From Perkinsus chesapeaki ATCC PRA-425 (Eukaryota; Protista; Perkinsozoa), in contig JAAPAO010000018.1 in the NCBI GenBank assembly GCA_013115145.1, positions 74,214-138,213 of the forward strand: 64,000 nt of DNA, given 5' to 3'. Position numbers and translations under genes: made by a program. Within the stretch, counting starts at the first letter, position 1. Each line of letters starts with the position of its first letter. The notes beneath the pieces were generated by a model. That model did no database searches, was not told the DNA's origin, and saw nothing but the letters and a program-made list of their open reading frames with translations. This document shows positions 23,882 through 52,083 of the stretch, in pieces.

Positions 23882-25239
23882 TGGCTTCCGTTGGTAGTGA
23901 AGGCCATAATATTATTTCTTTTGGTTGTAAAATTCGTGATAAAGATGTGGATTTGGTTATTGATACTGGTTCTCCTTATAATTTGATATCTACATCGTTC
24001 TATGCTTCTTTGGGCTGTGCTTTTCCGATAAATTATGACACTTCTATGCTTCCGTCTTTACATTCAGCAAGTGGTCATGGTATTACTGTGGTTGGCTCTG
24101 TTATTTTACCTATTACTATCCCGACAAATTTATATTCTGGTTTTATTAGAGAAACTTTTTTGGTAGTTGATAATTTGGTGTCTATCCCTATTTTGGTTGG
24201 TCGTCGGTTCTTGAAAGATGCTCGTGCTACAATTGATTTCGGGCAAAATGTTCCTGTTCTTTCTATCCCTGGATTATCTGGTATAAAATTACATAAGGCT
24301 ACCTCTTTGGAATATGGTACTTTACTTACTTCTTCGGTTATTGATTCTCCTCTAGAGACTCCGACAACATCTACATCTACTCCTATTAATGATATTGATT
24401 CGACTAATTCACCGAATTTACCGCCAACAGCAGCGACTTTACCCCCAGATCTTCGAGTACTACGAGTCGTGAAAGACGAAGGATGGATTTCCCTATTTCT
24501 GACAGAGAATGTGGTTACTAAGGAAGTTCGTTTTACAGCTGAGATTTTACCTGGTGTGGTACCTCCTATTAGCAGTGCTAACTTTTCTCGCTTCTCTGCT
24601 CTACATAAAAATATGGAAACGGCAACCAAACCCGAATGGCAAGCTAGTGATATTATTTGGAATGACTGGATATCTAGTGGTAAAGTGCGACCTCTTACAG
24701 AAGCAGAACATTCTTCAGTGGTTTCGGTACAAAACTTTTATGTCGTCCGTGGTAAAAGGTATAGAGTGGTATTAACAGCTATTTACCCTAATCGGTTTCT
24801 TCAGCGAGATTTGGCTCTTCCTCAAGAGAAGATTGATGAAGTTTTGACTGGTATGAGAGCATACCAATCTCATTGTATTTTAGATTTGAAGGATGCGTTC
24901 CTGGGAATTTCCCTAGGAACTGTGCTAAGTGATGTTACTACTGTTAACGTTGTATATAGTGATGGACATGCAATCCTCTGTAAATTTCTGTTTCTTCCTT
25001 ATGGATTAGCGTTATCGCCATGGTGTCTGGAAATGAGTGTCAGGGATTCCCTCTCATATTTCCGCTCCACTGTGATACACTCTTCCAGGATTTTCCTTAC
25101 ATCTTATATGGATGATATAGTCCTTTGCTGCTCACGGTCTGCGTATTCTTTTATGTTGCACCTTCGTGATCTCTTAATAAAGAGAGGTTTTGAGGTGCCG
25201 AAAAAGATCAGCGATGGAAAGCTGTCTTGCTCGACATGA
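23881..25239 (+). CDS. pol: Pol part 1: aspartic protease and reverse transcriptase palm
   Basis: LVIDTGSPYN (protease), LDLKDAFLGI, LPYGLALSP, YMDD. Confidence 0.92.
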   Translation: MASVGSEGHNIISFGCKIRDKDVDLVIDTGSPYNLISTSFYASLGCAFPINYDTSMLPSLHSASGHGITVVGSVILPITIPTNLYSGFIRETFLVVDNLVSIPILVGRRFLKDARATIDFGQNVPVLSIPGLSGIKLHKATSLEYGTLLTSSVIDSPLETPTTSTSTPINDIDSTNSPNLPPTAATLPPDLRVLRVVKDEGWISLFLTENVVTKEVRFTAEILPGVVPPISSANFSRFSALHKNMETATKPEWQASDIIWNDWISSGKVRPLTEAEHSSVVSVQNFYVVRGKRYRVVLTAIYPNRFLQRDLALPQEKIDEVLTGMRAYQSHCILDLKDAFLGISLGTVLSDVTTVNVVYSDGHAILCKFLFLPYGLALSPWCLEMSVRDSLSYFRSTVIHSSRIFLTSYMDDIVLCCSRSAYSFMLHLRDLLIKRGFEVPKKISDGKLSCST

Positions 25240-27749: not shown

Positions 27750-27779
27750 TACTTGTTTTCACTCTTTTCCTCAATCGTT

Positions 27780-27944: not shown

Positions 27945-28426
27945 CGTAGTAGCTGCGCACGCACGCGCTGACCAGTGCGCTCGCCTCGATCTCGACATAT
28001 CATGGCGCTCAGTGAGCACCATTCACAGTAGTATATTATTAGTCTGCTACTGCAATCGAGCATGTCATCAGCTCTTTACCAATCAAGAATAGCTTTCCAA
28101 CTTGGAGGGACTTTGAGGAGGGGGCACCCGGGAGGAAGGACTCCGGGCGCGCGCAAAACCACGAATTACTGACCATCGTCACGCGCCACGAAACTCCATT
28201 AACGCGTCGTACTTCAACCGTTCCCTTATTGGCTCAGTCTTATATCTCTTCTAAGAGGTACTCACGTATTTCAACTATCGAATTTAGATACAATGCCCTC
28301 TGTAAGGGGGCCTTATGGGGCGAGTCTTCAAACTAGTCTCTCCATCTCAACCGTTCCCTTACCCTGGAGGGATTAGAGTATAGTTTTAGTTTTTGGTGTC
28401 TTTGTTTTCACCGTACTTTAATAACT

Positions 28427-29074
28427 ATGGGCAATCTCTGCTGCTGTTTCGATGGCCCCACTACGGGTACCACCGTCCCCCCTGCGGCCACGACTACCGT
28501 GACTCGCAGCACCTATGCAGCTCCAGCTGCCCCACAGAACTACAACTACGCACAAGAGGAAGTGAAGCCATATGTCCCTCAGCAACAACAACAACAACAG
28601 CCTCATCAAATAGTCCTACCTGACGGTCGTGTGGCTATCCTCGGCACTGATGGTCAGTACTACCCCGTTGCCCAAAACCAACAGAATATGCCTCAGCAAC
28701 AGCCTGTTGCCCAGAACCAGCAGTACGTACCCCAACAGCAGCAACAGCCTGTTGCCCAGAACCAGCAGTACGTGCCCCAGCAGCAACCTATGATGGCAGG
28801 CCAGCCACCTATGCCGCAAAATCACGTGGTAGAGACGCATACCACTACTATTATTGATCACTCGGCCGCCCCTGCTGCTGCCCCGCAGCCCGACATGGGC
28901 CTTGGCACTGCTATGCTAGCTGGTACTGCTGGATTCCTCGGAGGTATGATGATGGGCAGCGCCATGGAGCAGCCTTCCAGTACCGTGATCGTTGAGCAGA
29001 GCCCATTGGTAATCGAGGACAGCCCTACCGTAATTGAGGAGACTATTGTCATCGACGACGATGACGATTGGTGA
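28427..29074 (+). CDS. Intronless Gln/Pro-rich protein with predicted N-terminal acylation motif
   Basis: MGNLCCCF start (Gly2 plus Cys cluster), QQPVAQNQQYVPQQQ repeats, Gly/Met hydrophobic patch, acidic C-terminus. Confidence 0.8.
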   Translation: MGNLCCCFDGPTTGTTVPPAATTTVTRSTYAAPAAPQNYNYAQEEVKPYVPQQQQQQQPHQIVLPDGRVAILGTDGQYYPVAQNQQNMPQQQPVAQNQQYVPQQQQQPVAQNQQYVPQQQPMMAGQPPMPQNHVVETHTTTIIDHSAAPAAAPQPDMGLGTAMLAGTAGFLGGMMMGSAMEQPSSTVIVEQSPLVIEDSPTVIEETIVIDDDDDW

Positions 29075-32289: not shown

Positions 32290-34395
32290 TCATTTCCGAG
32301 CCCGCAGCTTATCAATACGATTGGTAAAGGCGCCGTCATCCTGAGTAGGCCAGTCTTCGTAGACGGTGAACTTCAGCTGCTGTAGCTTGTCGGAGCTCTC
32401 GCTACCCTTGCCTATGGTGGGGAAGGTGTGGACGATAATGTAGACATAGGGCGCACTGCTGCGACATAGGATAACCTTTTCGAGAGTGTAGGGCAAGGAA
32501 GCTGCATCTAAGGCTTGATGGAACCATGAGACGGGCTCTAGGAGGTAGGCAGAGTGGCGGCCTACTAGATGGTAACCGACACAATAGAGACGATTCGGTG
32601 CCAAGACTTGACTAAGCTCGAACTGCAGGGCTTCGGACCAACAATGGTCATAGAGCATCACGTAGACATCGCAGTCGGTGGGGAGCTCAGCGATAGGTGA
32701 TATCTTTGTAGAGAGCTTATGCTTGGAGAGGAGCGCGGTCTCGATAGGGTCATCTGTTCTAACGAAAAGCTTCCAGTCTGGAAAGACCTCTATCAGCCTG
32801 CTAGACCAGCATAGGGAAGGTCCCTCCTGGACCAGGGCCTTAGCTGTTGATGAGAGGCCCAGGCTTAGGGCGCAGGCTCGAAGATATTTGGCGACTTGAA
32901 TGTCTACACGCTCTTGACGTTTGGTGTGCTCGATAACCGACAGGTCTATGGGAGAGAGCCCAACGCTCCGGTAGTCAGAGAAGTCGAGCGTCTCCTCGTT
33001 GATGGACTCGTCGAACGAGACAACGATGAAGTACACAGCCGAGCTCGGTGAGTTGTAGTTGAAAGCTGCCAAAGACCTTCCACCGGCCTCTCTAGCATAG
33101 AAGGCAAACCGGAAAAGCTCCTCGTGCTTCCACCTTTCCCCCACGTTGCTGTAGCTGAAGTTCCATAACAGCAACCGAGGCTTCTCAGACAACTTTAGGA
33201 TGGTCTTGAAGTCTTCTCGGAGGCCGCTTCTACGTCTACTGCGTAAATTAAGCATCCCCTCTTCACAGCACCATACTATACCGGGCACTTCGACAACTTC
33301 ACCTTCGTCAAGCCAGTGCCGAGGCCTCGGTATCGACTCCCAGAGCATGCCCAAGCCGGCAGTTGAGAAGACCTCCTGCGCCTCATGTCCCAAAGGCGTG
33401 TGGGGTGCTGTGATGTAGGCCGTCTCGATCCCTGCCTTGCTGCAGAGATCAAGAGCTCCGTCGGCCATCCACCGAGGGTACGCTAATCCAGTATCTCGCT
33501 GCTTCTCGACATTCACATCAATCCGTTCCGTCCACAGAGCTTCACTGCCATCGAGAACCAGTGAAGGCAGCTCGCTTGGCGGTAAATCGTCACCGCGCCA
33601 CGTAATTGCAGACAGGAACATCATCGGGGAGCTCCGAGGGTTGTGGCGATACCGCAGGCAATCGAGCCATCGAAGGTGCAGCCCTGGTTTACCAGCCTCG
33701 ACGATTGACTCGAGATAGTCCTTGACATTAAACCAGTGCTCCAAGGGGTAGGTCTCGCCAATGCCCCTCAACGAGAAGGATATGGCCAAGACGCACGGCG
33801 ACGCCATGAACCCGCTCTCGAGCAAGAATTTGAGATCGTCCCTCTTCCTCCTGCCAGTCTTGTAGCCATCTCGACCAAAGCTGCCGTTATAGTCAAGATA
33901 AATGCAGCGGAGCAAATGACCATCGGGCAGCCGATGCTCGAGGCCACCGTTAGGGCGAAGGAGGTCGTGGGAGGTCCCGTGCACGGTGACCAAAGTTTGG
34001 TACTTCTGCTTCATGGAGGAGAGCGCCTGGTCGTCGGGATTCGGTATGACAATCGACGAGGGAGGCACACCAGCCCCGTCAATGAGAGCTTCGGTGGTTA
34101 GAAGATGATCCGTGTCAAGGACCAGGCATGTCCCATCAGATGCGGTAGACACCGACACAACGGATGCGATGTAACTGAACAATGGAAGTGATTCTACGGC
34201 GACAGGTGTGGCCACCGACCTGTTGATCCTTTTCTTCAAGTCCTTCTCTGGCTCGTATGGCAGGCCTGTTGCCTTTAAGCGCGCAAGGTCGGATGGCATC
34301 ACACTAGGGATGACCTCTGCCTTAGAGTTGTGGACTATCTCGAACACGACATTAAAGAGTATAGTCAATTGTAGTTTACGAAAGAGTGACAGCAT
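32290..34395 (-). CDS. Intronless 701-aa protein with three diverged methyltransferase-like modules
   Basis: Long uninterrupted ORF with internal repetition (see findings); CLVLDTD and IYLDYNG resemble class I SAM-MTase strands. The fold is inferred. Confidence 0.7.
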   Translation of the reverse strand: MLSLFRKLQLTILFNVVFEIVHNSKAEVIPSVMPSDLARLKATGLPYEPEKDLKKRINRSVATPVAVESLPLFSYIASVVSVSTASDGTCLVLDTDHLLTTEALIDGAGVPPSSIVIPNPDDQALSSMKQKYQTLVTVHGTSHDLLRPNGGLEHRLPDGHLLRCIYLDYNGSFGRDGYKTGRRKRDDLKFLLESGFMASPCVLAISFSLRGIGETYPLEHWFNVKDYLESIVEAGKPGLHLRWLDCLRYRHNPRSSPMMFLSAITWRGDDLPPSELPSLVLDGSEALWTERIDVNVEKQRDTGLAYPRWMADGALDLCSKAGIETAYITAPHTPLGHEAQEVFSTAGLGMLWESIPRPRHWLDEGEVVEVPGIVWCCEEGMLNLRSRRRSGLREDFKTILKLSEKPRLLLWNFSYSNVGERWKHEELFRFAFYAREAGGRSLAAFNYNSPSSAVYFIVVSFDESINEETLDFSDYRSVGLSPIDLSVIEHTKRQERVDIQVAKYLRACALSLGLSSTAKALVQEGPSLCWSSRLIEVFPDWKLFVRTDDPIETALLSKHKLSTKISPIAELPTDCDVYVMLYDHCWSEALQFELSQVLAPNRLYCVGYHLVGRHSAYLLEPVSWFHQALDAASLPYTLEKVILCRSSAPYVYIIVHTFPTIGKGSESSDKLQQLKFTVYEDWPTQDDGAFTNRIDKLRARK

Positions 34396-34499
34396 GCTTT
34401 GTGAAACTTGGCTACATTATCTACCACAAGCCGTTCTTGCGCGCCTCGTAATTCTCCTTCCGCTTGACGCATCCATCTTATCTCCATCGGCAGGGTCTT

Positions 34500-37052
34500 C
34501 TACGCTCTAGCTGCATGCCTTGGTGGCCCTCGTGGCTTCCGAGTTGCGTGCCTTTGTGTTCCAGCTTGGAGGGTGTTGCAAAACTGCACACCCTGTTCCT
34601 CCAGCAGTTCTCTCAGTAGCGTTTGGTCGCACACTAGAGAAGGGTCCTGAGAGCGAGTTACCATTGACCGAGACCAACATGGTTACCTGCTCCTTTAGGC
34701 GGTTTGCCAGATCAGTGATGTCGATGGTCTCAAAGAGCAGCATGCGTTGCCAGATATCAGCGTCCTTCCTGATGGCATGGACGAGAGCCTTCTTATTCGT
34801 CTTACGCTTCTCATCGGCCTCTCGCTTCTTCTCTGAGCATCCCAGCGTCCGCCCAGCCGCTTCAAACTTCGGTTACCTTCCCGGGATTTCTTTGCCGGTG
34901 ACTTCTTCTGTCTTTTCCTCTTCGGCAGTTCCGGCTCGGCCATGGAGCTCTCCGCCACCGCAGCACTTCCCTTGTCGACATACCTATCAACATGCGTGCA
35001 GAGTAGCCTCAAGCTCCGAGTGTACTTGGCGATCTCACCGAGGGTCCTTATCATGTTCCCCCTGCTGGTGGTGCCAGCTGTGACCTTCAAGCCGAAAAAC
35101 GACATCCATCGTTTCAGCTCCTCGTCCTTCAGCGTGTCCCACGCCATAGAGTCAAGGACGGACCTCCCAGCTCGGGCGTCCGCGGCACTCTCCACCGCCG
35201 CTCGAGGCTCAGCGGAGCCCTTGGAAGAGCCAGTTTCCGGAAGGGCGCCTTGGGAGCTGCCGCCCACCATCACAGCTCCGGCGAACGCGTCATCCGACAT
35301 GAAGGGATCAGACAAGCTGGCCGCCGCCGCCGTTGCCTCATCGTCGTAAGGTAGGGTAGACTCTCCAGGCGGCTCCGGCACACCGAGGCTGGCCAGTGAC
35401 AGCCGAGCACGCTTCCAGCTACCGTTGGCCCATCGGCTCACATCAGAGCCTCTCCTCATGGCACCCAAAGCCTTGATGCGCTCGACAAGTGGAAGGGCGT
35501 CCAGCCAAGCGGTGTCATCCTCGCTGGGGGCATCCCCGGCACTGGAGGCCTTCGCTGGGGTGGTAGAGATGCTGCCACCGGAGAGGCACTGGATGTCATC
35601 GTCATCATCACTGAACGCTAATGGCAGCTGGCTGGGAGGTCCTCTTGAGTGCTCATCTCCCATCATCGACAGTTCGTCCGCACTAACTTCAATAATCGGT
35701 GAGGATGGCACGTGGTCCAAATCAATGTCCCAATCGAGCTCCTGACTGCCCTCCTGTTGAACAGTTGCCGATGTGGCCACACTACACCGGAAGTGTGCAG
35801 GGCCCTCATTATCTGACACCATCTCATTCGGCGTCAGAGCCAGAGCCTCGGGGACCGGCTCCTCTTCATCGTCCATGAGCTCCGTCTGGTCAATGTCCTG
35901 TTGAGGCTCCACTGGCTGCTGAGGGCTCTCCTGTGGCTCACAGAAATGAGTGAGCTGCATATTCCGGGCGAGTGACGGAGACGGCTCTGCTGCCGGCGGC
36001 GGCGTGTCTTCTGCCGGCACCTTAGGCCTCGGATGCTTCTTGAAGAGCTCCTCGAGGTATCGTTTAACTGCGTCCAGCCGCACCCCCTTGGCCTTGTTGC
36101 GCTCCACACCGGCGTACAACCGACTTAGAAAATCTACGGCATTATTCGCAAAATAATGAAGGTCATCTCGGCTATCTGAAAGACAGGGCATGACCGCGCG
36201 CCACGAAATCCCGAGGCTTACAGACACGAGGGTCAAGGTACTTCGTCAGAGTGCTTTCAAGCTCGTCAGCGGTCGCGACCAACTCGGTATTCGACATAAC
36301 GAAGAGTTCATCGTAATCGTCCAAGAAGCCAGGAACGGTGGGATAGTTCGACAAATACGGCCCGTGCTGGTCCAACACTCTGGGGAAGGGGCTCGGGAGG
36401 CCTTCCTGAAAGAACCGTTTTGGAGGGACCATTGTGTCCGCTTACCGGCCTCGCCGGGATTTCCAGGGATGATGCGCTCGCCTTTGAATTCCCCTCAGCT
36501 GGCTGAGGGCAAACAATAAAGAAGGAGCGGCAAGCGGGTTGGGAGGTTACTTTGGCATTGGTCCCGAGAGCTGGTCGTTCCGAAGGTGCCAGTAGGTCAT
36601 CTACACAGCAGTAGCTGATTCTGCCCATAATTCGTATCACAGCGGCCTCTCTGTCAGCATAGGGATTCGTAAAGGTCATAAGATTGGCCTCGTCATTGGC
36701 CTGGGAGATATCGACCACCTTCACCTTTGATGGCCGGGGGGATGGCGAGTCCGGGCCGCCGGGACTCAGGAGCTCCACGGGTACTTCGTGTAGGACATTG
36801 AGGAGCCTCTCTTTCTCCAACTGGAGCCTATCGAACCCCTAGACCGCGCGCCACGAAATTGGGATCCTACGTGGCTATCTTGCGGTCTGCGGTAGCAATC
36901 CTCCTTTTGATGAGCTCGACCTCCGCGACGGTCCAGGCCGCGCCGTTCTTGGGCTTGAAATACTTGGTAATATCATCCTGCTCCATGTCCAGCTCATCCA
37001 AGCATCTTGGGAGCCCCCTAGTCTTCCGTCTGGTATTCTTACGTGGAGGCAT
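34500..37052 (-). CDS. SLX4: SLX4-like structure-specific endonuclease scaffold, multi-exon
   Basis: C-terminal SAP-like WDTLKDEELKRWMSFFGLK...MIRTLGEI, followed after splicing by ALVHAIRKDADIWQRMLLFETIDITDLANRLKEQ|DPSLVCDQTLLRELLEEQGVQF (SLX1-binding domain pattern). ATG at 37052, TAG at 34500-34502. Confidence 0.75.
36192..36209 (-). promoter_or_regulatory. Recurrent intronic motif ATTTCGTGGCGCGCGGTC (copy 1, intron 36176-36221)
   Basis: Identical 18-mer at 36842-36859; 14-mer core also at 42434-42447; 13/14 inverted copy at 38505-38518. Confidence 0.6.
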
Positions 37053-37449
37053 TATACGCTGACAATGGTGGGCCAATGGAACGTGTAGCCCCAACACAAG
37101 CGATGAACGGAGAATGAAAAACAACTACTCACTAATATGCAGTGGGGGGAGATAACACAATTGGAACGAAAAATTCAGAACTGGTCGGAGCTGTGGTGAA
37201 ATGATCTTCTATTGGGGATGCGGCCCGCCGTCGGTGGGCGGTACGTCAAACTCGGCGCCGGCTTCTGAGCCGGACTCTCCAACTCTGCCCAAGCGTGCAT
37301 GGTCTAGATGGTCTTTATGGAGAGAGCTGCTGCTGTGACCTGACAGGGATGACACTATGGCATAGTCCATAGATAAATCGATGCGTGTTTTAAGGAGTCA
37401 AATTTGCTATTAAAACATAACATGGCGGCTATCTTGCTGATGGAGTTCT

Positions 37450-39686
37450 TCATCCGTATTTCCGAACTCCACGATAAGCCCTAGGTGCCTCACCTTTGAG
37501 TAGAGCAGCGACTGGCTCTGGCCTCTCATCAATGGGTGCGCTGACAAAGCTATCACCGAGGCTCCCGCGGCCCGAGGATCCAAAAGAGCTGGCCATCGGC
37601 GGTGGGACAACGAAGGACGATTGCGAGCCGAGAGAGAATACCGAAGATTGCCGACTGATAAGAACGAAGAACCCTCCTAGGATCTGCACGGCTGCGCCTG
37701 CTGCCTACAACTCGTAGTTCATAGGTGAGTTCGAATGTGGCCGATCAGTTGGGCTCATGTCCAAAGATCTCGCTTGGAAGTCATCGGCGTCAAGATCGCT
37801 ACCTGACAAAACAGTCCTTGTGGTGTGGTCATTCTTCGTAGTGCGCAAAGATACGAGCCTTACCAACATCTATTGTAAGAGTCTCCTCATCTGCCTCGCT
37901 CGCTTGGGGTTGGTAGCTTGGCGCACGTAGGGAGGCTGAATACAACAGGCCAGTGCAATGGACGCTCGCAATCCCAGTTCAAGGCAGCCTCTAACAACAG
38001 TAATATACAATGACAGCAAGAGCAACCCCCGAAGGTACGGACGAATGACAAGGTTTCGACCTGCCTGTCAATTATCGACGAGGCAATCAAGAAGTGCTTA
38101 CATCGTGACGGCCTCTCAGTAACCGTCTCGGCGTAATCGCTGGTGGGAGAGGAAGGCTCTTCATGGGGGTAACGACCAAGATGAGGATCAAATGCTGATG
38201 AGAACGACTACAACACTTGATGGGGGCTGGGCGAGATCACCTTCGTTGACGAACTGAGGCACCTTTTGAACCTCCGAGAGGAGCATGTCGTTGGAGAGGA
38301 CATGTGGGGCGAAATGTATCCATTCCTCGTTCACTAAGGACGGTCTCCATGGGCAGGAGCAACGAACCTACGAACGACCCAGGCTCGAATCCCCCCTGCG
38401 GCATCTCTCTACCCAATGGTAGTGGTCGGCTATCAAACCAGTTGTAGGATCACGCCTGGAGTAGTGCACCACCATACCATTATATATCTGACATTAGTCC
38501 ACGTATTTCGCGGCGCGCGAGAATATCGACCACCTTAAATGTTGGTTCGTGTGGATGTACTCTTCTCCGTCGTGGCCGATTACGATGGACTTCGAACCCT
38601 TCGCTAAAGTCGGCTAGGACCAGATACCACTCTCTCGCCAGTTCGCAGATTCCTTCACCTACTTTGTCGTTTTCTCTCCACCAGAGCTCTAAACGCCTTA
38701 ATAACTCCACCATGGCAGACTATAATAACACGTAGGCCAGCGCTGCCCTTCTGAAGATGCTTGATGACACTCTCGACCCTCAAACACAGATTCGCAATAC
38801 CTGCCACCACAGGAACAGTAGAACACCGCCACCACGGCGGCGGAGAAGGTGGCGCCTTACTTTCCCCTCCGCTGGGCTGGAAGTAGAAGCTGTCTCTGTC
38901 CTGGCGTTCGATCTCATCTGCATGTTCCCTTCTCCTTTCCATTTTAGACTTGTTTGCCAGCACACCACGGTCACGCTCTCTGAGGGCCACCAGAAGTTAG
39001 AACCGTTTCCCAACTTTAAGGCTCAGACGCTCGTCCCATTTCAATGGGAAAATTGTTTGCTTTGTGAGCAAATATAGGAAAAGTGGTTAGTTTCCTGGCC
39101 TGGCTGAGAAAGGAATCCAGCCGTCTGGAACCGTCGAGTTGAACTCACGGGTAGAGAGATATTAGGAATACGAAATCACGCTGGAAAGCAACTTCCATAT
39201 AATCGTAAGATGCGGGCAATGCTGCCCAGTGCTCGGTGGGCCACTGAGCTCCCCTACCTTAGGAAGAACTCGGTCCTCCATTCAGCTTCTTGTATATGAA
39301 GATAAGCAGCCGTCTCCATTGCTCTGATGTATTCACTGGTCAAACATATATCAAACGCTTCACCTGACGGAGGGCCTTCACCTCCCACGGCCAAATCGCT
39401 CCACTATCCCTCACCAACATGGTCCTTGATCCATTTTCCAGCGGCCTCAGCCTGAGCTCGACCACGGTCTGTCAGACGGTACTTGGAGTTGTGGCGTGCC
39501 CTAAACCCACTGGTCCAAGGGTTGGGAGCATCTCCTTGCTGGGCCTGACATGCCGGCTCAGAACGCTGAGATGACGCCACTCAAGATTCCTACCATCTTC
39601 TGGGCTAGGTTGCCCTCGCTCTCACCGTGGCGGACCAGGATGAGATCAACAGGCATGTTCTTGTAGGCGAGACGCCAGGAGGCCAT
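37450..39686 (-). CDS. Histidine phosphatase / phosphoglycerate mutase family protein, multi-exon
   Basis: LILVRHGESEGN, LTDRGRAQAEAAGKWI, LRERDRG, VIIVCHGGVIKAFR, IYNGMVVHYSRRDP. 3' end approximate. Confidence 0.88.
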
Positions 39687-39784
39687 CAAAATGCAAGGAT
39701 GATGCGGTAAAGGAGAACTAAGAGCTGCAACAAACTGCCTCCGACGATCGCAAGACAGAGTAAAAGGAAACACTGACGCACATG

Positions 39785-40713
39785 CTACAAAGCCTGCTCT
39801 CGCAAGGCTGCACGTATGGTGTCAACATTGGACTCGAGGACCATGCCTCCCATCACGACTTCGTCCAATACGTAATTAGCCTAATTACCGGGACACTGAG
39901 GCAGAGGCAGTAAAGAGGGCTACCTACCTTGTCGAAATGGTAAACCAAATCTAGCTCACATACACTATCGAAGCTGCTGTCTAATACCTGAAGTCGATGG
40001 CAAGATGGTTAAGTGCAAAATGTCCATTGGCCATCTGGAGAGTAGGATAGGAATGATAACTACTGAAGCTGGCGCATGGGTTTCTTCCTGTAGGCTAGGA
40101 AGAAGGTAAACAAAATAGCAAGGCTCACAAATTTTCCGAGAAGTTCCGGAAAAGGAAGGAAAAAGCTGATTAGAAGCGATTGCCGGGTGGCTGCTGCTGC
40201 CTGCCTCTCCAAGACTCAGACCAGCAGTATCGAAACATCGAATACAGCCACATGCCATATTTTAATACTATTGGGCTGATTGTTGGTGCATTTGTTTGGA
40301 CACCCTACCTGTACGAGAACCTGTATAAGATCTAGTACAGCCAGATCACTCTCGGTTTCATCGACAATAAAGGCGAAGTAAAGAGTAGCAAAGTGCCTGA
40401 GCGATACAGTTCACGAAGTCAGTGCCACAGAAGAGACACTTGTAGATAATCCTAACATTCCTTCTAGATCCTCTTCGATCGTTCACATCTATAAGCTCAG
40501 GGAGAGCCTCGGAGACGATGCAACAGCAACTATCATCTGGTCTAAAGAAGAGGCAATTTTATGGCGCGTGACGGAGCTGACCGCCGACCTTGCTCTGAGA
40601 ATGGCATGGACTCTGTGGATGAGCGGTTGTCGAGCAGCCAAAGGAATCGCTGTGTAAAAGCGAGCCAGTCGCGTCTTGCCACCGTTGTTGAAGACTAGCG
40701 CTGCTAGAATCAT
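39785..40713 (-). CDS. Adaptor protein complex small (sigma) subunit, AP-3 sigma-like
   Basis: MILAALVFNNGGKTRLARFY...RHFATLYFAFIVDETESDLAVLDLIQVLVQ|VLDSSFDSVCELDLVYHFDK|ANYVLDEVVMGGMVLESN. Confidence 0.9.
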
Positions 40714-40899
40714 TATACAACAAAAACAGCAACAGCCCAGTGGGAGGCAGTTGAACTAGGATGCCGTATAGGTTGCCTAAGAATATTAACCCCCTGGAGA
40801 GCTTCGGACGGTCTGCACTGAATCCACCCTCCCCTGTGGGATGCCAGGAGCACAATACGAGTAGATGTGAAATGTCCATCTCATTATAGTGTACAAAAT

Positions 40900-41821
40900 A
40901 GTTACAATAGATCCTCTTCGTCAAGTTGATCAGCAACGGTATGGCTTCCTTCAATGGACGCTAATGCCAACTCTACCTGGAAGAGGACAAACCTGGAGTA
41001 AAGTTCGTGATGGAACACAGTGAACACTTTTAGCGTGGAGAAAGGATGCTGGAAATCATCAGTCTAGGCACAGGGGAGTTCGGTCTAGGCACATTTACCC
41101 TGAATCCTGGACCGTACGTTCTCGCATCGTCAGATGTAATATAGAAGGAGACTTGGTGGATGCAAGATGCGATAGGAGAGCATCAAACGCGAACACAAAG
41201 GATGTTTCCTGCCACTAGGGACATATCTCTATTATATTCCAGCACTAGAGATCTCCCAAGGAACACCTTTATACCCAGATGATATCCTGCATATGCCACC
41301 GACCTGATCTCGAGCCCACTTGGCCTCCTCCTTGCTGTCCGCCTCCAGCAATGGCATCTGCCTCAACGTGGAGTCCACTCCGAGCTCACGTAGCCGACCA
41401 CCCATCGCGGACCCGCCGCTTGATTCCCCCGTCAGGAGTATCACCGCTGAGGAAGTCCATACGGTCGCCAAATAGAGCTGGTCTTACCATACGCAAAACG
41501 GCCCAGTCTGATCTCACTGTTGACTTTGGTGTCCAATAGCACCCTAAGTTCTCGCGCTGCAGCAAGGGGAAGGTCTACACTGTCCGTAATGGTGTCCGCG
41601 GTAAACAGTGTCTCGAGTAGACGAATACAGGGCAGGTGATCGGGGCCATGGTGAAGGAAGGATGCCAGGAGGCAGTTGATAGTGGAGTCACGTAGGGGCT
41701 GAAAATGGAGGCAATACATTCCGAAGGGCCGGCAGTAGAGAGAGACGCTCCAAATCGTTCCCCGGAATTCACAAGTCCAGAACCGAGTCGTGGTTGCAGA
41801 ACTCCGTGTTGCCTTCATCAA
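40900..41821 (-). CDS. Hypothetical multi-exon gene
   Basis: ORF pieces 41441..41821 and 41232..41471 with splice signals; no domain recognised; boundaries approximate. Confidence 0.35.
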
Positions 41822-41849
41822 TGAGTCATTTGCGCTGACAATTTCTACA

Positions 41850-43270
41850 AGTGATAGCTAGCACCTTCGATGGCCTGTGGACATCAGTTATCGGAGCCTC
41901 AAGAGCCGTGAATTTCGGTGCGCGTGACGCATTCGATTCCTACATCATCTATGCCATCATCTCCTTGTTTACTAATCCATTCAGTCATCAACTCCGCTGC
42001 TGCCCTCATAACCCTCTCATCTTCACTAGGTGGCATTAACATACACTTCTCTGCCAGCAAAGGGGCAAAGACCCGACTGATAGCGGATGGCCTGAAGGGG
42101 ACAAGGACGGCAGCCATCCAACCAGCAAGTGATGTGCCCAGCACCTATCTGGCTCCTCCCGATTGCCCTCCATAGCACTAAGCACATCCAACACCCTTAA
42201 AGTTACCCTTAATGGGAGTGCAGAGGTATTCAACAATGAGACCAGAGTATCTGAGAGAGCGGTAATAACATACTGCCGAGGTGGCTCGTTTGACCCCGCG
42301 GCCGCACATATTCCTGAACGAAGCCGTTGCCGCTGAAGAGTAACTTAGACTATGTATCAAGGTGGTTGATGGAGCAATAGAAAACCAGTACTTAGAGCTG
42401 TCGTACGATATCCCCTCTCACTAACAAATTCTGGCGCGCCACGAAATTCCAGGGGTGGTGCCTCCCTAGGCCCATTTTGCACAGACTGCCCTCGGATTCT
42501 GCTGATGCTGCTGCTTACCCCTTCTTCTCACCTTCCAGTTTCCTGTCCCTCCTACTGTAGCACTTGAGCTTCTGCCGTACAGCAATAAGGCCCCTCTCAA
42601 CCTCCCCATAGTCGCCATTTTCCATAACATTACTCACATAAACCACAGCCTCATCAAAAGAAGCTTCACGGAGCTCTAAGGCTGTAAGCGCCCGCACTGG
42701 ATGGGCATCCTCTGGAGGAGCGTCCTCCATCACCATCCGCCGCCTCTGGGCCTTCAGCAACTGAACCTCCTTCCTCTGCAGTTCGACCAGATACCGGGCC
42801 AAGCTGGTGCCGGTAAGCCCCCTATATGTCACTGCGTTCGGGTCCCTGATGCCACTCTGCGAGGCCTCTTCCAGCACAGTCTGACCGTGGACAGTGGCGG
42901 TGGGAATGCCAGGCAACACTACCTTCACTTCAGAAATCTCCTCCTGAATGTAGCTCAGATCTGAGTGGGCTTGCAGGATGTACTATTGACTATTAAAAAA
43001 ACTACAAGTTAAGCGGAAGAATGATGCAAGACAGGAAGTTTTCGGAGGTAGCTTTCCACCGGTAAGATGGCAGAGGTGAATGTCACCGCGGCACTCCTCG
43101 GCTTTCCTAATTTCCAACGCGGCTGCTTCACGTGGTAGTGCCTCCTGAGGACTGCTCTGTCGAGTTCTTGCAACTAGATTGGCGGTTTTCTCCCCGGAGA
43201 TTTCCATTGCAGTTTTCCACATTTTAATTATACTAGCAACAAACTCCACCTCAGCAAAGGAAACAATCAT
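41850..43270 (-). CDS. Hypothetical multi-exon gene, partly coiled-coil
   Basis: ORF pieces 42983..43270, 42515..42928 and 41899..42144 read as helical protein and are separated by short introns. Confidence 0.45.
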
Positions 43271-43272
43271 TG

Positions 43273-46200
43273 TTAGGAAGTAGTACTTGCAATAGCAGCT
43301 GCGGCTGCAGGACCCGAGGGGACCTCTGCTGCGCGCTGAGGAGGAGGCGGTGACCGGAGCGGAGGCAAGTCTCTGAAGATGCTTCCCTGCAACCCACCCT
43401 CGTTCCTGGCTGGCCGGGAAGGTCTCTCGCTGCTAACAACCGCAATATCATCGTCATCGTCAATCTCCATTAGGTCCACTGATTCTGCCTTTTTCCGTGC
43501 CTCCATCGCTGCTCGGTGGTCATCCAGAGCTTTAAAAATTTGAGGGCATCTGTCCTCGAAGGATAGACTCTCATCGAAAACGTGAACATAGATCGACGTG
43601 TGCTTCGGCCGGTGGCAGATGTCCCCCATGACCTCATCATCCCCAATAGGCCTTGGCTCCACCGCTTGGTCGGTATTAAGAATGACCCTAAAGCACTGGG
43701 GCGGCTGGTCTATCACACTTTGCCCAAGTAAAAGCATCTTTAAGTCGTAGCCGGTGCACTCGCTACTAACTTCCTTCAAATCATCCAGCCGGCCTCCCCG
43801 CGACCTCGACGTACCATCGCCCCGCCGCACTTGCATAGCGATATCATCATAAACCATGTGGGCCTTAGCATTGCCCGAAGACGGGGGCAGCAAGCTCAGC
43901 AGTTCGCTGGTCTCCGTGGTAGAGGTACAGCAGCCCTTGTCACAGACGGGGGGGTCGAGGACGAGCTCGTTCTTGTCGCCATCTCGCCGTACCTGATCTT
44001 CCAGATGCTCCGGGGTTACTCCTGAAAAGCCACTGGCAGCCCCGAGCGGTTTTATAGATCCTCCGGCACTGTGATGATGAAGTGTGTACACATACTGTAT
44101 CTTGCATTTTGCGTTGTGTGTGTCGTATCCTTCTTCAGCGCTGCAATGACTACTTTATATTAATGTTTTTACTTGTCACAAAAACCTCTCAAACGGACCC
44201 TGTTGAGTTGTATAACCCGCAGGCACAGTGCTTAGCACAAGCTCATTTATAATCGCCATAAAGACATTATCAATTTTGTGCCACGAGCGATACAATATTT
44301 TTCGAGCTGGCATCAAATTTCCGCAAGGATATGCAGTAGATTTCCGAAACACATGACTCCTGCAAAGATTCGTTCGAGCTCACCTTGGCAAGACTCCCAT
44401 CATTCGACACATACTTCTTCTCCAAATACTTTCCCACCTCCTCATCCAACACCACCACCCACTTATTTTCACAATGCCCTCTACCTCGAGGATCGAACCT
44501 CAGCAGGCCATGCTGGCAATACATCAAACTGTAATATATCTCCCTTACGGAATCTATTCGGGCCTTCTTTGGCCCGTCTTCCTTTTCCTTCTTCGCCTCG
44601 TCACCGAATTGCGACAGATACTCCCGCCAAGACGTAAACCATCTTTTAGGTAGCAAATAGGACCAGCTGCTCCCCTCCAGATCGGACGGCAGGTCCTCCA
44701 GCGCCACCTTCCCCCCGCTCTCCAGCAACCCTTTACATTTCTCCTTTTCCTCCAAAGCGACCAGCTCCGCCTCCAGCCTCTCCTTCGTGCATTCTGGACA
44801 CAGAGGCTCTGATGGCTGCACCCACCGGTCGATCTGCAACTTCGGCAGCGCGCCGGGCAATTCAACAGCGAGCTGCTCCGAGGCGTCCAGGAGCTTCTCT
44901 AAGACCTTGATTTCCCGAGACACATACTGCGATCCTTCCGCGTGGTTGGAGGTCTTCCCATGCGGACATACAAGCCCCTCGCTCAGGTCCGAGACCTCCG
45001 GAACCTCCTCCTTCGCGCCCCTGACCAAGTGATTGACCACGAACCTCCAAAAGCGCACGTTATCCCAGACGAGGTTCCCTCTCGGAGCAACTTTAAGTGA
45101 TATCTTCAACCTGCTGGTAGCCGCCTTCGTCCCTCCTATCGGCACACTCGGCAACTTGGTCTTATTAATGACGGCCAGCGACGGCTTCCTCTGTCCATTC
45201 CCCTTGCCACTGCTGCTCTTCGATGGTGTTGCCAACACTACCACACATGTCTCCTCCAATTCACGCAAGCATTGCACTTTCTGATGAAGGTCCGAGCAGC
45301 ACTCAAAGCAGAGGGCTTCGGATGCTGGAGTCACCGCAGCCTCGAACTCAGGCTGTAGTAGGGCAGCTGGTATCACCTTCACTGCGCCACGAAATGTCGC
45401 CAGAGGATCCACTTTGCCGTGCGAACATCCCACACCCGAACAGAGCGAGTTGCCGTTGGTTGCCTTCACAGGCGATTCGCCAACGGCCACACAGCCGGAC
45501 TGCTTCTCCGACCGCGCGCCACCAAATTGTTCTTTTAATTTTTCTGCCACATCATCGCCGGCGCACCAGCTTGATACGAACTGGGATGGAATAAAGTAAA
45601 GCGAGTCAAGAGAGGCGCCGGCCTCGCTGGACTGGCCGAGCGCAGTCAAGGTTGACATCACGGAGGTAAGTTGACTCTTCCGATTAGCCACTGCCGTCTC
45701 AACGGCTTTCGATGCCTGCTCCATGAGTTGGATTTCAGAGGTGACCTGGAGAGGTTGAAGCATGCATCTCATATTTTAAAAGATATGCTACCTTCTGGTT
45801 GATCTCATCGACCTCTTCCCTCAGCCACTTCGGTATCTCTCTTCCCTCTTGTTTAATCGCATCATCATCCATCCCCACTACATCCTCCCGTGCGTACACC
45901 AACATATATGCCGTCTTCGAAGCCCCTCTGGGAGCCTCCGGAGATGCCTCATCGATCATCCTCTCCAAACTAGCTGGCGATGACCCTCCCTTCACCGACT
46001 GCCCACTTGCCGTCGTGCAAGCGTCCTCATCTTCCCCCGGACTTTTCGTTCCCGATTTTTTCCTACTCCCTTTGCTGAGTCTTCGTCTTTTCTTAGGCGC
46101 CGATTCCTTCACCGCCCATTCGTGCGGCTCCACCCTCTCATCGTTGAACGCCATCCACCCTCCTGCAGCCTCCCCAGTCAGCAGCGTCGCCGTGTAATGG

Positions 46201-48560
46201 CCAGAGTTTGCCGAGGCGCCGTGGTGCTCCAAGACCCCCGTGCACCTGTATCTTGCGCGCCCCGAAATTGCCTCGCCCTCGTCCGTAATGAAGGGTGTTA
46301 AGTCCAAATCCTCCAGCGGGAAGTCGACCTCCGCCGCCAACCGTCTTCGTTCGCCATTCTCAAACATGTACCGCTGGATGATAATACAAAGATGCTCCGG
46401 GCACTTTTCTATTTTCTGCACTCTCACAGCCTCCCCTCGCCCACTGCAATTCAAGCACTGATAGTCGCTGAAGTTTTCCTGCTCGAACGTCCTCGCCAGG
46501 GACTCCTCAAGTCGCAGAGGTTCCGCAGAGTCCAAACAAATCCGGAGTTCGGCGAGGCGCTCCGATCGATGCACGCTGTTGCCACACGTGTTGCACTGCG
46601 TACTGTAGCGAATGCTACCGCAAAAGATATCTTGGATGAAGTTGGGGGAGCCCGAGGGGATCTGCAATACTCATCTCTGGAGACGTACGACTGCCCAAAT
46701 TACCGCACTCTCAATCGTACTGAACAGCATGGTTGCCAGCTCGCTGGTATCCTCCTGCACTCCCGAGTCAAGCTGCAAAGATTCTCTCCAACGTCGCCAA
46801 GGTCTTCTTCAATCGCTCCTTACCTTACACGCCTTTATGAACGCCTCCACAGATCCCTTGCACGTAGCTGACACTCCCTCCTCCATTTCAGCAAATAGTA
46901 CCTAAGACGGAGGCTCTAAAGAGAAGTCCACAGCCACCACGGAACTGTCAAGGGAATATCGAATGAAGGAAAAGGGAGATAACGAAGAATAAAGAAATTC
47001 AATTGTTAGACGATTACCGTAGGAAGGGAACAAGCCTATTTGAAGCCCCAGTGTGTCGGGCACCTTCCTGAGGTCTCGTAAATACTGTGCACGATGTGAT
47101 CATGTGGAATTTTGCGACGATTGGTTTATCCATGAAAACATCGACGACTATCGGACGAACCAATGCAAGTGTCGCTTTCCAGTGGAAGGCTGGAACAGCT
47201 CAAGACAGCGCGATGGTTGAACTGAAGCCGATCGGATGAGCGAGATCTTTGAGAAGCTCCCATGAATGATGATATATTATCCCCCCACAGCAAACATTTA
47301 ATAGTATTACTCCACTACCTACTGTAGTCTACCCCTTCCTCCCCCCCTTTGTTGCTTCACATACCGTCTCGTATACTATCCGTTTACTAGACTAGCCCCA
47401 TGTTCCCCGAACAAGTTAATTCCACCGATTAAAGGCTGCTGCTGCTGCCCTTCTCGAACAATACCAATCCCGAGCACCAGAGTCATGTTGGCTCTGTTAT
47501 CTGCCTCACCTCACAGTAGCCCTATTCCTATATACACCTCATCACAGCCCATTCTAAACCGCCCCTGCCTCAGCATCCCCCCTTCTACTACCTGCATCGT
47601 CCTTAACCACGTTCCCTTCCCCTCCTCTATCGGTGGTATACTGTAAATGCCATACCGAAATGGTTTGATGGCATAGAGAGCTTGAAGCAGGGCATTCGCG
47701 TAGCAAGTGGCGCCGAGGTTACGCAGCCCCGCGTATTGTCCTGAAGGCATTCATGTCAGTTACACATCGAGTTCGTTTTTTGTCACAATTTTTACGAACT
47801 TCCCCTCAGAACCGACCCGGGCACCATCAACAGTACCTTCCCTGAGCTGCTCAATATTCCTGTCCAATCCCAACTCGACCTTCAGGAATCGGGGCGACCA
47901 CAAGCCCTCCTTTCGATTTGTTGCCGACTGAAAATGAACAATATTAGAGGAATTATCAACAACATTTCAACCGCTGGCCGGTTCGGTGAAGCTGGTGGAG
48001 AGCTTCACCATTTGAAACTCGTTAATGCATTTCGTCTACTATCATCCAATGCTCATCGCGGTTGAGCTCTACCACCAACAATTTCAACGCTCTTAATACT
48101 GCAAACTAGCACAGAGCTCATACCGCTCCCTCACCAAGCACCTCAGAATTTATGGTACACCCATTCCACAGCCCCATCTTTAAATGAATAAGCACAGGCG
48201 CAGTGAACCGCCCCCCTTACTACCATAAAATCGAGAGGATCGTCCTTATGCCGTTGACTTGACTTCGGCGTCGTCCACTTCAACTTCGATAGGCTAAAAC
48301 ATGCCCACCTCACAGGCTCAGAGGAAACCCCGAAGCTGCCCGTTTCACCTCGGAAGGTTATAATACGGCAGGAGCGTGTCTGGCTTGTCTGCAACTGGTG
48401 CCTCCTCCTCCTCCGGGAAGCAGTTGAATTTCACACCAGCTGCATTCGAAGATGCCATCTCGATAATCGAAGCTCCCGAAGCTGAATCTTTTGACACTAT
48501 CTTTGATAGAGATATTGTGCGTAAAAATCCGACGATTCCTCCGCCGCTTTCCAAGCTCAT
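43273..48560 (-). CDS. USP48-like ubiquitin-specific protease (paralog A): N-terminal module, UCH, DUSP-like, UBL-like
   Basis: Cys box [16 protein letters not shown], His box GVLEHHG..NSGHYTA, WMAFND; DUSP-like [12 protein letters not shown] and [14 protein letters not shown]. The upstream PYYNLP exons splice in phase 1 (REG|GQYAG). Start is 48560 or 48458. Confidence 0.88.
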
Positions 48561-48772
48561 AGTAATAGTGACTTCTACACAACAGAATAGGATACAGTCA
48601 AACGTATACTAACCACGCAACTTATACAACTGTTATCATTCCACATTCGCACACAACTGTCATACTAGAGCTCCCCTGCCTCCTCCTTTCGCCTCATCAT
48701 CAGGTGCTGCTCTGCACATCTCCTCCCGCTCGCCATGAAATTGATTTATACCACATTTCCTTCGCATTTCCT

Positions 48773-51700: not shown

Positions 51701-52083
51701 AGGAGAGCAAAGACGGCAGCCCTACCGGCCCTCAAAGGCTCAAAGCCTTTATCCAGACCAAGCTCTTTCATCACAAAGTTCTTCTTTCGCCAAACACCAT
51801 CACGGAGGTTCAAAGATCCCTGAGAACACAGAGCGTATCTTGTGCACACCCATCAACCGTCACTGCGCCACAAAATTCAGCAAGTCCGTAGTCGATCTTC
51901 TGGTCAGAAGCCGCGCACACTTACAATAACATCAGCAGCGTCGCCCTTAACTGGACGAACTGAACGCTTGTCGGACCATCGAAGAGCTCGCACGTTCGCT
52001 GGCAGGTTATAGTAGGGCATCAGGGACACCGCGCTGGATGGGGTGTCCGGGGTGGGGGCTCTCACCAAGAATTGGACGGACAT
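48773..52083 (-). CDS. USP48-like ubiquitin-specific protease (paralog B)
   Basis: ATG at 52083 (MSVQFLVRAP...LMPYYNLP); phase-1 splice LRAG|[19 protein letters not shown]; His box GALEHHSTVAHAGHYTA, WWRLDD; DUSP-like and UBL-like regions in the 804-aa terminal ORF. Confidence 0.88.

What the first reader, a model, noticed from the sequence alone, without database searches (positions are those of the whole stretch)
36176..42461. Orientation-independent GC-rich motif ATTTCG(T/C)GGCGCGC inside multiple 40-46-nt introns of unrelated genes
An exact 18-mer ATTTCGTGGCGCGCGGTC lies in two SLX4 introns (36176-36221 and 36828-36870, starting 11-12 nt after the donor). The exact 14-mer core lies in a probable GC-AG intron (42421-42461). 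A 13/14 copy lies in the opposite orientation in a phosphatase intron (38488-38533; HPHEPTFK|IYNG). 11/14 copies lie in an AP-sigma intron (40556-40569) and a probable intron at 41912-41925. The motif fills about a third of each tiny intron, whose other bases are unrelated. Both orientations occur, which argues for a DNA-level element rather than a splicing signal. It contains CRCGAAA (SCB/E2F-like) and TGGCGC (E2F-like). Possibilities are an intragenic protein-binding or chromatin/replication element stored in introns because spacers are tiny, internal promoters for downstream genes of the unidirectional cluster, or the footprint of an introner-type element.
Basis: partly seen in the sequence, partly recalled or inferred. 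Interest (0 to 1): 0.8.

Follow-up and report, generated by a model that had tools for sequence, protein, structure and literature searches.

The report
Conserved GC-rich motif in Perkinsus genes
A 14-20 letter GC-rich DNA motif recurs about 14 times in 24 kb of a Perkinsus (shellfish parasite) gene cluster, in tiny introns, short gene spacers and coding exons. Several copies sit at the same spots in two distantly related Perkinsus species, so it is most likely a maintained docking site for a DNA-binding protein, not a splicing signal or a trace of intron-making jumping elements.

Summary
The motif ATTTCGYGGCGCGC is real: 4 exact and 2 one-mismatch copies against 0 expected. A weight-matrix scan gives about 14 copies, all between 28.1 and 51.9 kb. 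The window is the end of a Perkinsus contig (GCA_013115145.1) that is an outgroup to P. marinus and P. olseni. Seven copies are intronic (4 sense, 3 antisense), four are exonic and in frame, and three lie in spacers. The proposed 41-nt GC-AG intron is more likely part of a 281-nt GT-AG intron.

All five sites occupied in P. marinus or P. olseni are also occupied here. These include an 18/18 identical copy at the same offset in SLX4 intron 1, a spacer copy shared by all three species, and two exonic copies with unchanged silent sites. Neutral sites are only about 40% identical. The host introns exist in the other species without the motif, so these are not introners.

No RNA structure, Rfam or tRNA match was found, and the canonical E2F consensus is not met. 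The best reading is a selected double-stranded DNA protein-binding site, partly biased to gene 5' ends, with an unknown binder. Earlier notes of this scan report other conserved intron motifs on other pieces of this genome. I could not tell whether any of them is this motif.

The parts
36190..36209 (-). Motif copy ATTTCGTGGCGCGCGGTCAT (full 20-mer), sense, in SLX4 intron 4 (36176-36221, 46 nt), 12 nt after the donor. Found in this species only.
   Evidence: the intron is present in P. marinus (52 nt) and P. olseni (45 nt) without the motif.
36842..36859 (-). Motif copy ATTTCGTGGCGCGCGGTC, sense, in SLX4 intron 1 (36828-36870, 43 nt), 11 nt after the donor and +193 from the ATG at 37052.
   Evidence: 18/18 identical at the same offset in P. 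marinus intron 1 (L001 10198-10248). Decayed to about 12/18 in P. olseni.
38505..38518 (+). Motif copy ATTTCGCGGCGCGC(GAGAAT), a quasi-palindrome, antisense to its host, in the 46-nt histidine-phosphatase intron 38488-38533.
   Evidence: the P. olseni orthologous intron (95 nt) lacks it.
40556..40574 (+). Motif copy ATTTTATGGCGCGTGACGG (GTGACG variant), antisense, in AP-sigma intron 1 (40542-40588, 47 nt), about +150 from the ATG at 40713.
41912..41929 (+). Motif copy ATTTCGGTGCGCGTGACG, antisense, starting 14 nt after the donor of a 245-nt intron of the gene upstream of AP-sigma (41699-41943).
   Evidence: P. marinus has a perfect sense copy, also 14 nt after the donor of the orthologous intron (L001 4757-4776).
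42428..42447 (-). Motif copy ATTTCGTGGCGCGCCAGAAT (near-palindrome around GGCGCGCC), sense, 84 nt into a probable 281-nt first intron (42251-42531).
51863..51876 (-). Motif copy ATTTTGTGGCGCAG(TGACGG), sense, in the 105-nt intron 1 of the upstream ubiquitin hydrolase gene UCH-B (51820-51924), +207 from the ATG at 52083.
33593..33606 (-). Exonic copy ATTACGTGGCGCGG(TGACG), in frame as I-T-W-R-G-D, in the intronless 701-aa gene.
   Evidence: the P. olseni orthologue has ATTTCGTGGCGCGGTGACG (L002 13958). Silent sites inside the motif are identical, while four flanking degenerate codons differ.
46255..46268 (-). Exonic copy ATTTCGGGGCGCGC (I-S-G-R-A) in ubiquitin hydrolase UCH-A, inside a 9-residue segment that the paralogue UCH-B lacks.
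   Evidence: the P. olseni orthologue has the perfect 14-mer (L002 1603).
45514..45527 (-). Exonic copy ATTTGGTGGCGCGC(GGTC), read as F-G-G-A-R, in UCH-A. Not present in P. olseni.
45382..45395 (-). Exonic copy ATTTCGTGGCGCAG(TGAAGG), read as F-R-G-A-V-K, in UCH-A. 9/14 retained in P. olseni.
34439..34452 (-). Spacer copy (GA)ATTACGAGGCGCGC, 47 nt after the SLX4 stop codon and 44 nt before the ATG (34395) of the 701-aa gene.
   Evidence: conserved in all three species (P. olseni GAATTGTGAGGCGCGCGACGG, P. marinus GAATTCTGTGGCGCGTGACGG). Also.
34405..34419 (-). Second conserved spacer block TAATGTAGCCAAGTT, 11-25 nt before the same ATG.
   Evidence: a 15-nt exact match to P. olseni, the longest common substring among true non-coding gaps.
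48728..48741 (-). Spacer copy ATTTCATGGCGAGC (weaker, 15 bits), 35 nt after the UCH-B stop codon and upstream of UCH-A.
28145..28194 (-). Copy GTTTCGTGGCGCGTGACG followed by a degenerate second copy (AATTCGTGG..GCGCGCGCC), about 246 nt upstream of the plus-strand gene that starts at 28427.

Best explanation
The motif has a core ATTTCGTGGCGCG(C). It is often preceded by GA and followed by GGTCAT, GTGACGG or MAGA. Its most likely role is as an old, selectively maintained recognition site on double-stranded DNA for a sequence-specific protein, probably a dimer or a multi-domain protein, given the 20-bp extent and the near-palindromic copies. Spacers between genes in this Perkinsus genome are only about 100-220 nt and introns about 45 nt. 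The sites therefore sit wherever sequence is free to hold them: first introns, the spacer just upstream of a start codon, other introns, and tolerant loops of coding sequence.

Shown: the motif is non-random. It occurs in both orientations within introns. It is conserved at orthologous positions in intron, spacer and exon across species whose neutral sites are nearly saturated. It is independent of intron origin.

Inferred: that a protein binds it, and that it acts on transcription or chromatin of the neighbouring genes (promoter-proximal regulation). The binder is unknown.
For: Non-random occurrence:
- 6 copies at <=1 mismatch against 0 expected.
- About 14 copies at >=15 bits, all within 28.1-51.9 kb.

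Species relationships and divergence:
- SLX4 identities are 61% P. olseni-P. marinus, and 53% and 49% for the window against them. The window species is therefore the outgroup.
- Four-fold degenerate sites are only 39-41% identical.
- The median longest common substring in 71 orthologous non-coding gaps is 6 nt.

Conservation against that background:
- The SLX4 intron-1 copy is 18/18 identical at the same 11-nt offset in P. marinus. By my arithmetic that is 0.4^18, about 7e-8.
- The spacer copy is kept in all three species.
- The two exonic copies shared with P. olseni have 6/6 silent sites unchanged, p about 0.004.
- All 5 distinct sites occupied in P. marinus or P. olseni are also occupied in the window.

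Evidence that it acts on DNA:
- Intronic copies are 4 sense and 3 antisense.
- The orthologous gene-X intron carries the motif 14 nt from the donor, sense in P. marinus and antisense here.
- Two copies are near-palindromes.
- There is no RNA structure signal, with z between -1.1 and +1.1.

Location:
- 9 of 13 copies in the minus-strand cluster are non-coding, against about 30% non-coding sequence (p about 0.004).
- 4 of 7 intronic copies are in first introns (p about 0.02).
- Three more copies lie in spacers: two of them 44 and 246 nt upstream of start codons, the third (48728) upstream of UCH-A, whose start codon I could not locate.
Against: - No binding protein is identified, and no transcription, accessibility or expression data exist for this stretch.
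- Overall orientation leans to the sense strand (11:3, p about 0.06). All four exonic copies are sense, which a pure DNA site does not predict.
- About 9 of 14 copies are seen in this species only, so many may be recent or unselected.
- A 20-bp identity between non-orthologous copies in different species is longer than a typical transcription-factor site.
- The sample is one 24-kb cluster plus two syntenic loci. The 5'-end bias rests on small numbers and on my own gene models.
- Several genes in the cluster, and the other 40 kb of the window, have no copy, so it is not a general promoter element.
Confidence: 0.5

Rival explanations
1. It is an RNA-level element. The motif would be read on the pre-mRNA or mRNA by an RNA-binding protein or a complementary small RNA, for example as an intronic splicing enhancer for very short introns or as a 3'-end or stability signal.
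For: - Orientation leans to sense (11 of 14 independent sites), and all exonic and in-cluster spacer copies are sense.
- In four short introns of the two species the motif starts 11-14 nt after the donor.
- Two spacer copies lie 35-47 nt after a stop codon.
Against: - Three intronic copies are antisense, including one whose P. marinus orthologue is sense at the same offset.
- Copies lie in an intronless gene, and 84 and 48 nt deep in longer introns.
- Other orthologous introns splice without it.
- There is no structure signal and no Rfam match.
- In a 43-47 nt intron, a 20-nt block can only sit about 8-14 nt from the donor, so the offset is not informative.
Confidence: 0.15
2. It is the remnant or product of a copy-and-paste process. 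Candidates are an introner or MITE end, a templated repair patch, or a fragment of a conserved small-RNA gene, such as the 5' acceptor/D-arm (A-box) part of a tRNA. The last would parallel the tRNA-tail relics that other notes of this scan report in Perkinsus introns.
For: - Sub-families share extended flanks (GGTCAT, AGTGACGG or CAAGA) across non-orthologous copies, and the same 20-mer occurs at different loci in two species.
- This species has about 4 times more copies than the syntenic loci.
- The exonic 45514 copy replaces about 24 nt of the P. olseni sequence with almost no length change (one extra residue here).
- UCH-A has a 9-residue extra segment at the 46255 copy.
- Two copies contain TGGCGCAGTGA, which is 10/11 of the tRNA A-box consensus. 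The resemblance of the core to tRNA 5' ends is from memory only.
Against: - All motif introns pre-date the species split and have about the same length with or without the motif.
- There are no terminal inverted repeats, no target duplications, and no similarity outside the 20 nt.
- No tRNA or Rfam model match was found. There is no B-box enrichment in the window.
- The Tc1-like element nearby in P. marinus has unrelated 317-nt inverted ends.
- Same-offset conservation over saturated divergence needs selection whatever the origin.
Confidence: 0.15
3. It is an E2F/DP-type (or SCB/MCB-type) cell-cycle promoter element.
For: - The core is GGCGCGC with a T-run 3 nt upstream, and its reverse complement holds CACGAAA.
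- SLX4 is a typical S/G2 repair gene.
- Copies are biased to gene 5' ends.
Against: - The canonical TTTSSCGC occurs at chance level and never at a motif copy.
- The conserved part is 14-20 nt, much longer than an E2F site.
- The host genes (AP-sigma, phosphatase, ubiquitin hydrolases) are not an obvious cell-cycle set.
- Whether Perkinsus has E2F/DP was not tested. SBF/MBF are fungal factors.
Confidence: 0.07
4. It is a chance or compositional artefact (CpG-rich low-complexity matches).
For: GGCGCGC alone is only mildly enriched: 13 against 4.9 expected, with 1 of 100 shuffles reaching that count. Copies scoring under 13 bits, such as 44848 and 17608, are at noise level.
Against: Zero of 100 shuffles give any copy at <=1 mismatch, against 6 observed. 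There is cross-species identity at orthologous non-coding positions.
Confidence: 0.02

Closest known systems
Promoter-proximal and first-intron transcription-factor sites, with the E2F/DP site TTTSSCGC as the nearest named consensus
   Same: A short GC-rich double-stranded DNA motif that works in either orientation, is partly palindromic, is enriched near gene 5' ends including first introns, and is conserved between species.
   Different: The E2F consensus itself is not met. The conserved block is 14-20 bp. Copies also sit deep in genes and in coding exons. No binder is known.
Long architectural or insulator-type sites (CTCF sites in animals, 'extra TFIIIC' B-box sites in yeasts)
   Same: Sites of about 20 bp, dispersed at roughly one per gene, found in genic and intergenic DNA, kept by selection, and containing CpG. 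The comparison is from general knowledge.
   Different: CTCF is confined to bilaterian animals. There is no B-box here. No chromatin data exist. This is an analogy of behaviour only.
Introner elements (Micromonas, Aureococcus, dinoflagellates such as Amoebophrya; PMC7789003)
   Same: A repeated sequence is found inside many introns of unrelated genes in an alveolate.
   Different: Introners are whole-intron copies with their own ends, often with direct and inverted repeats, and they create new lineage-specific introns. Here only about 20 nt is shared, the introns are old and positionally conserved, and copies also lie in exons and spacers.
Other conserved motif families in Perkinsus mini-introns noted earlier in this scan (B-box/tRNA-tail relics, palindromic and sense-strand motifs)
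   Same: Same genome and the same behaviour: a short motif fills part of tiny introns and is kept at orthologous introns in P. marinus or P. olseni.
   Different: This window shows no B-box enrichment. The letters of the other motifs were withheld, so identity with any of them could not be checked.

Membership tests
E2F/DP binding site | Match to the consensus TTTSSCGC on either strand | tested here: not met
   6 matches in the window against 6.4 expected, and none overlaps a motif copy. In the main copy the T-run and GGCGC are separated by CGT.
E2F/DP binding site | The organism encodes E2F and DP proteins that bind the site | not tested
   The literature search gave no statement for Perkinsus.
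Introner element | Copies share the whole intron, including its ends and any terminal or direct repeats | tested here: not met
   Only 14-20 nt is shared. The flanks within the introns are unrelated.
Introner element | Host introns are lineage-specific gains | tested here: not met
   SLX4 introns 1 and 4, the phosphatase intron, AP-sigma intron 1 and the gene-X introns exist at the same positions in P. marinus and/or P. olseni.
Spliceosomal intron signal (branch site or intronic enhancer) | Fixed sense orientation and restriction to introns | tested here: not met
   3 of 7 intronic copies are antisense. 4 copies are exonic and 3 are in spacers.
tRNA-gene relic (A-box/B-box, TFIIIC site) | Detectable match to a tRNA model, or an A-box followed by a B-box | tested here: not met
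   ARAGORN found 0 genes. There was no tRNA hit at E<=10 over the two SLX4 introns. The B-box is at chance level. The A-box reaches 10/11 in only two copies, at a chance-level count.
Selected cis-element (conserved non-coding element) | Retention at orthologous non-coding positions well above the neutral expectation | tested here: met
   18/18 in SLX4 intron 1 against a neutral identity of 0.40 and a median common substring of 6 nt. The spacer copy is present in three species.
Transcription-factor binding site | Demonstrated protein binding or a footprint | not testable with these tools
   No accessibility, ChIP or DAP data are available. No RNA run holds the stretch.

The most novel reading that the evidence does not exclude
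Perkinsus may use its tiny introns, its short spacers and even tolerant coding loops to house a genome-wide set of roughly 20-bp protein docking sites. This motif would be one family, alongside the B-box and other families noted elsewhere in the scan. The sites would organise transcription or chromatin, as insulators or internal promoters, in a compact genome of unidirectional, partly trans-spliced gene clusters. On that reading, part of the reason the mini-introns persist is that they carry DNA signals.
Probability: 0.2. Interest if true: 0.8.

Novelty: new variant of a known kind. Interest (0 to 1): 0.55.

Why it matters
Almost nothing is known about how perkinsids, the sister lineage of the dinoflagellates and parasites of oysters and clams, control transcription. 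A 14-20 bp motif has survived at the same intronic, spacer and even coding positions since before P. chesapeaki-like, P. marinus and P. olseni lineages split. That gives a concrete, testable handle: a probe for pulling down the binding protein, and a candidate element for improving Perkinsus expression vectors. It also bears on why very short introns are retained in compact protist genomes. Some may be kept because they carry DNA signals. Finally, it shows that repeated intron motifs need not mean introners.

Tried and rejected
- RNA evidence. No public run holds the stretch. Laying the two same-species runs gave nothing.
- Metagenome scan for the 20-mer. It gave two high-GC bacterial contigs, which are chance hits.
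- Rfam at gathering threshold on the window and two loci, and at E<=10 on the two SLX4 introns. Nothing relevant was found. ARAGORN found no tRNA.
- B-box and A-box scans were at chance level.
- RNA folding of four motif introns showed no stability signal.
- E2F consensus scan was at chance level.
- Motif search in the other spacers of the cluster (upstream of SLX4, the phosphatase and AP-sigma) found none, so it is not a universal promoter element.
- Comparison with the inverted ends of the nearby Tc1-like transposon in P. marinus showed they are unrelated.
- Attempts to sample more Perkinsus DNA through transposon proteins failed. No genome-wide statistics could be made.
- Exhaustive reconstruction of the P. 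marinus gene-X model timed out or found no solution. The 281-nt intron is therefore my model from three-species alignment, not a confirmed annotation.
- Literature searches found no description of this motif.


Full report
**What is there**

The 14-mer ATTTCGYGGCGCGC occurs exactly at 36196, 36846 and 42434 on the minus strand and at 38505 on the plus strand. One-mismatch copies lie at 45514 and 46255. No dinucleotide-preserving shuffle gave a single such match. At three mismatches or fewer there are 21 matches against 6.3 expected.

A weight matrix built from the copies finds 14 sites at 15 bits or more, all between 28.1 and 51.9 kb of the 64-kb window. Two further sites score at noise level. 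The threshold used gives about 2.5 random hits per window, and the matrix is circular for its own training sites.

A repeat finder that knows nothing of the motif returns it as the main short dispersed repeat of the region. It splits the copies by 3' flank into GGTCAT, (A/G)GTGACGG and MAGA variants. Two copies are near-palindromes: ATTTCGTGGCGCGCCAGAAT and ATTTCGCGGCGCGCGAGAAT.

**Where the window comes from**

- The SLX4 C-terminal exon finds only Perkinsus proteins. Identity is 53% to P. olseni and 49% to P. marinus.
- The intronless 701-aa protein maps the window to the last 64 kb of contig JAAPAO010000018.1 of assembly GCA_013115145.1. Earlier notes of this scan call this genome P. chesapeaki.
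- P. olseni and P. marinus SLX4 are 61% identical, so the window species is the outgroup of the three.
- I fetched the syntenic loci L001 (P. marinus) and L002 (P. olseni). Gene order is conserved.
- Four-fold degenerate sites are 39-41% identical, which is close to saturation.
- In 71 orthologous non-coding gaps the median longest common substring is 6 nt. The few values of 14-21 nt turned out to be exon ends.

**Gene context of the copies**

Seven copies are intronic:
- SLX4 intron 1 (36828-36870, 43 nt).
- SLX4 intron 4 (36176-36221, 46 nt).
- A histidine-phosphatase intron (38488-38533, 46 nt; antisense copy).
- AP-sigma intron 1 (40542-40588, 47 nt; antisense copy).
- A 245-nt intron of the gene upstream of AP-sigma (41699-41943; antisense copy).
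- A probable 281-nt first intron of that same gene (42251-42531).
- UCH-B intron 1 (51820-51924, 105 nt).

The evidence for these is as follows:
- Conserved exons flank each intron.
- Four of the lengths are not multiples of three.
- Intron phase is conserved across species.
- The deposited P. marinus and P. olseni SLX4 proteins can only be reproduced by removing the orthologous segments.

In all three species the segment between the exon ending ...LEG and the exon starting DTL... is about 280-330 nt. It is unconserved and bounded by GT..AG.

Four copies are exonic and in frame. These are 33593 in the 701-aa gene, and 45382, 45514 and 46255 in ubiquitin hydrolase UCH-A.

Three copies are in spacers:
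- 34439 lies 47 nt after the SLX4 stop codon and 44 nt before the next ATG.
- 48728 lies 35 nt after the UCH-B stop codon.
- 28181 lies 246 nt upstream of a plus-strand gene.

No RNA data could be obtained.

**Conservation**

- SLX4 intron 1. The P. marinus intron has the same 18-mer, and in fact the 20-mer consensus, starting 11 nt after the donor, exactly as in the window. The rest of the intron is scrambled. P. olseni keeps a decayed version.
- Spacer before the 701-aa gene. All three species keep the motif (GAATTnnGnGGCGCG...). They also keep a second block, TAATGTAGCCAAG, closer to the ATG.
- Exons. The copies at 33593 and 46255 are matched by stronger copies in P. olseni. All six degenerate third positions inside the 14-mer are unchanged, while neighbouring silent sites differ.
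- Gene-X intron. P. marinus has a perfect sense copy 14 nt after the donor. The window has an antisense copy starting 14 nt after the same donor. Either the ancestral site was palindromic, or the site was kept regardless of orientation.

Overall, all five distinct sites occupied in P. marinus or P. olseni are occupied in the window. About nine window copies have no counterpart. The P. olseni orthologues of three such short introns show slightly raised residual scores (2.2-3.7 bits, against -9 to 0.1 in eight control introns). That hints at decay rather than gain, but the evidence is weak.

**What this excludes**

- Introners. The host introns are old and have similar length with or without the motif, and nothing outside about 20 nt is shared.
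- A splicing signal. Antisense, exonic and spacer copies exist.
- RNA structure or a known RNA family.
- tRNA relics of the kind other notes describe. There are no tRNA hits and no B-box excess here.
- A canonical E2F site.
- A universal promoter element. Three other spacers lack it.

**Most likely mechanism**

The motif is most likely a recognition site on double-stranded DNA for an unidentified sequence-specific protein. The site is long (14-20 bp) and tolerates inversion, so the binder is probably dimeric or multi-domain.

Location is biased to non-coding DNA. Nine of 13 copies are non-coding against about 30% of the sequence, p about 0.004. My estimate of the coding fraction is rough.

Location is also biased to gene 5' ends. 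Four of seven intronic copies are in first introns, and three of those lie at +150 to +210 from the start codon. Three more copies are in spacers, two of them 44 and 246 nt upstream of start codons. With spacers of 100-220 nt, first introns are the nearest free sequence.

The binding itself, the effect on transcription or chromatin, and the 5' bias beyond this one cluster are all inferences.

The main unexplained points are:
- The overall lean to the sense strand (11:3).
- The 20-bp identity between unrelated loci in two species.
- The four-fold excess of copies in this species.

These points keep an RNA-level reading and a templated-copy origin alive as rivals.

**Relation to earlier notes and to the literature**

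Notes on other pieces of this genome report several motif families conserved in Perkinsus mini-introns and interpret them as protein docking sites. My result agrees in kind. I could not check whether any of those families is this motif, because their letters are withheld.

Full-text searches found no description of the motif or of conserved intron motifs in Perkinsus. One paper confirms that most Perkinsus introns are under 100 bp (PMC3101222).

Noticed in passing
window 34405-34419 (minus); L002 about 13140-13160; L001 about 12880-12900: A second conserved spacer block, TAATGTAGCCAAGTT, lies 11-25 nt upstream of the ATG of the 701-aa gene. It is kept in all three Perkinsus species and could be a transcription start or a trans-splice acceptor region. 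It shares GTAGCCA with the Perkinsus spliced leader as I recall it, which I did not check.
   Followed up: partly
L006 3683-9896 (= window about 34500-40713); L002 1-6195: The deposited annotations fuse neighbouring genes. In the window's own assembly, AP-sigma, the histidine phosphatase and SLX4 are one 1366-aa product. In P. olseni, the ubiquitin hydrolase and the next gene are one 2643-aa product. The spacers of about 100-200 nt seem to defeat the gene callers.
   Followed up: no
window 43276-52083 (minus): Two tandem paralogous ubiquitin C-terminal hydrolase (USP) genes, UCH-B and UCH-A. The P. marinus syntenic locus lacks them except for a relic of about 130 nt (L001 3194-3325).
   Followed up: partly
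L001 12388-12439; L002 12286-12335: SLX4 intron 6 is a GC-AG intron in both P. marinus and P. olseni, according to the deposited proteins. GC donors are therefore used and conserved in Perkinsus.
   Followed up: partly
L005 9402-11298 (P. marinus): A Tc1-like DDE_3 transposase gene is flanked by 317-nt inverted ends that are 99% complementary, with internal ATTTCCGAC/ATATCCG sub-repeats. It looks like a young, intact element, and its exact protein occurs only once.
   Followed up: partly
window about 23800-27750 (plus): An LTR-retrotransposon pol ORF (integrase zinc-binding and core domains, RNase H) borders the motif-rich gene cluster. The first 28 kb of the window has no motif copy.
   Followed up: no
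window 28655-28783: Three tandem 39-45 nt Q/P-rich coding repeats lie in the plus-strand 215-aa gene.
   Followed up: no
window 42360-42527 (minus): Inside the probable 281-nt intron, a 56-codon open frame runs through the motif and reads it as E-F-R-G-A-P. It is not conserved in the other species and could be an unannotated alternative exon.
   Followed up: no
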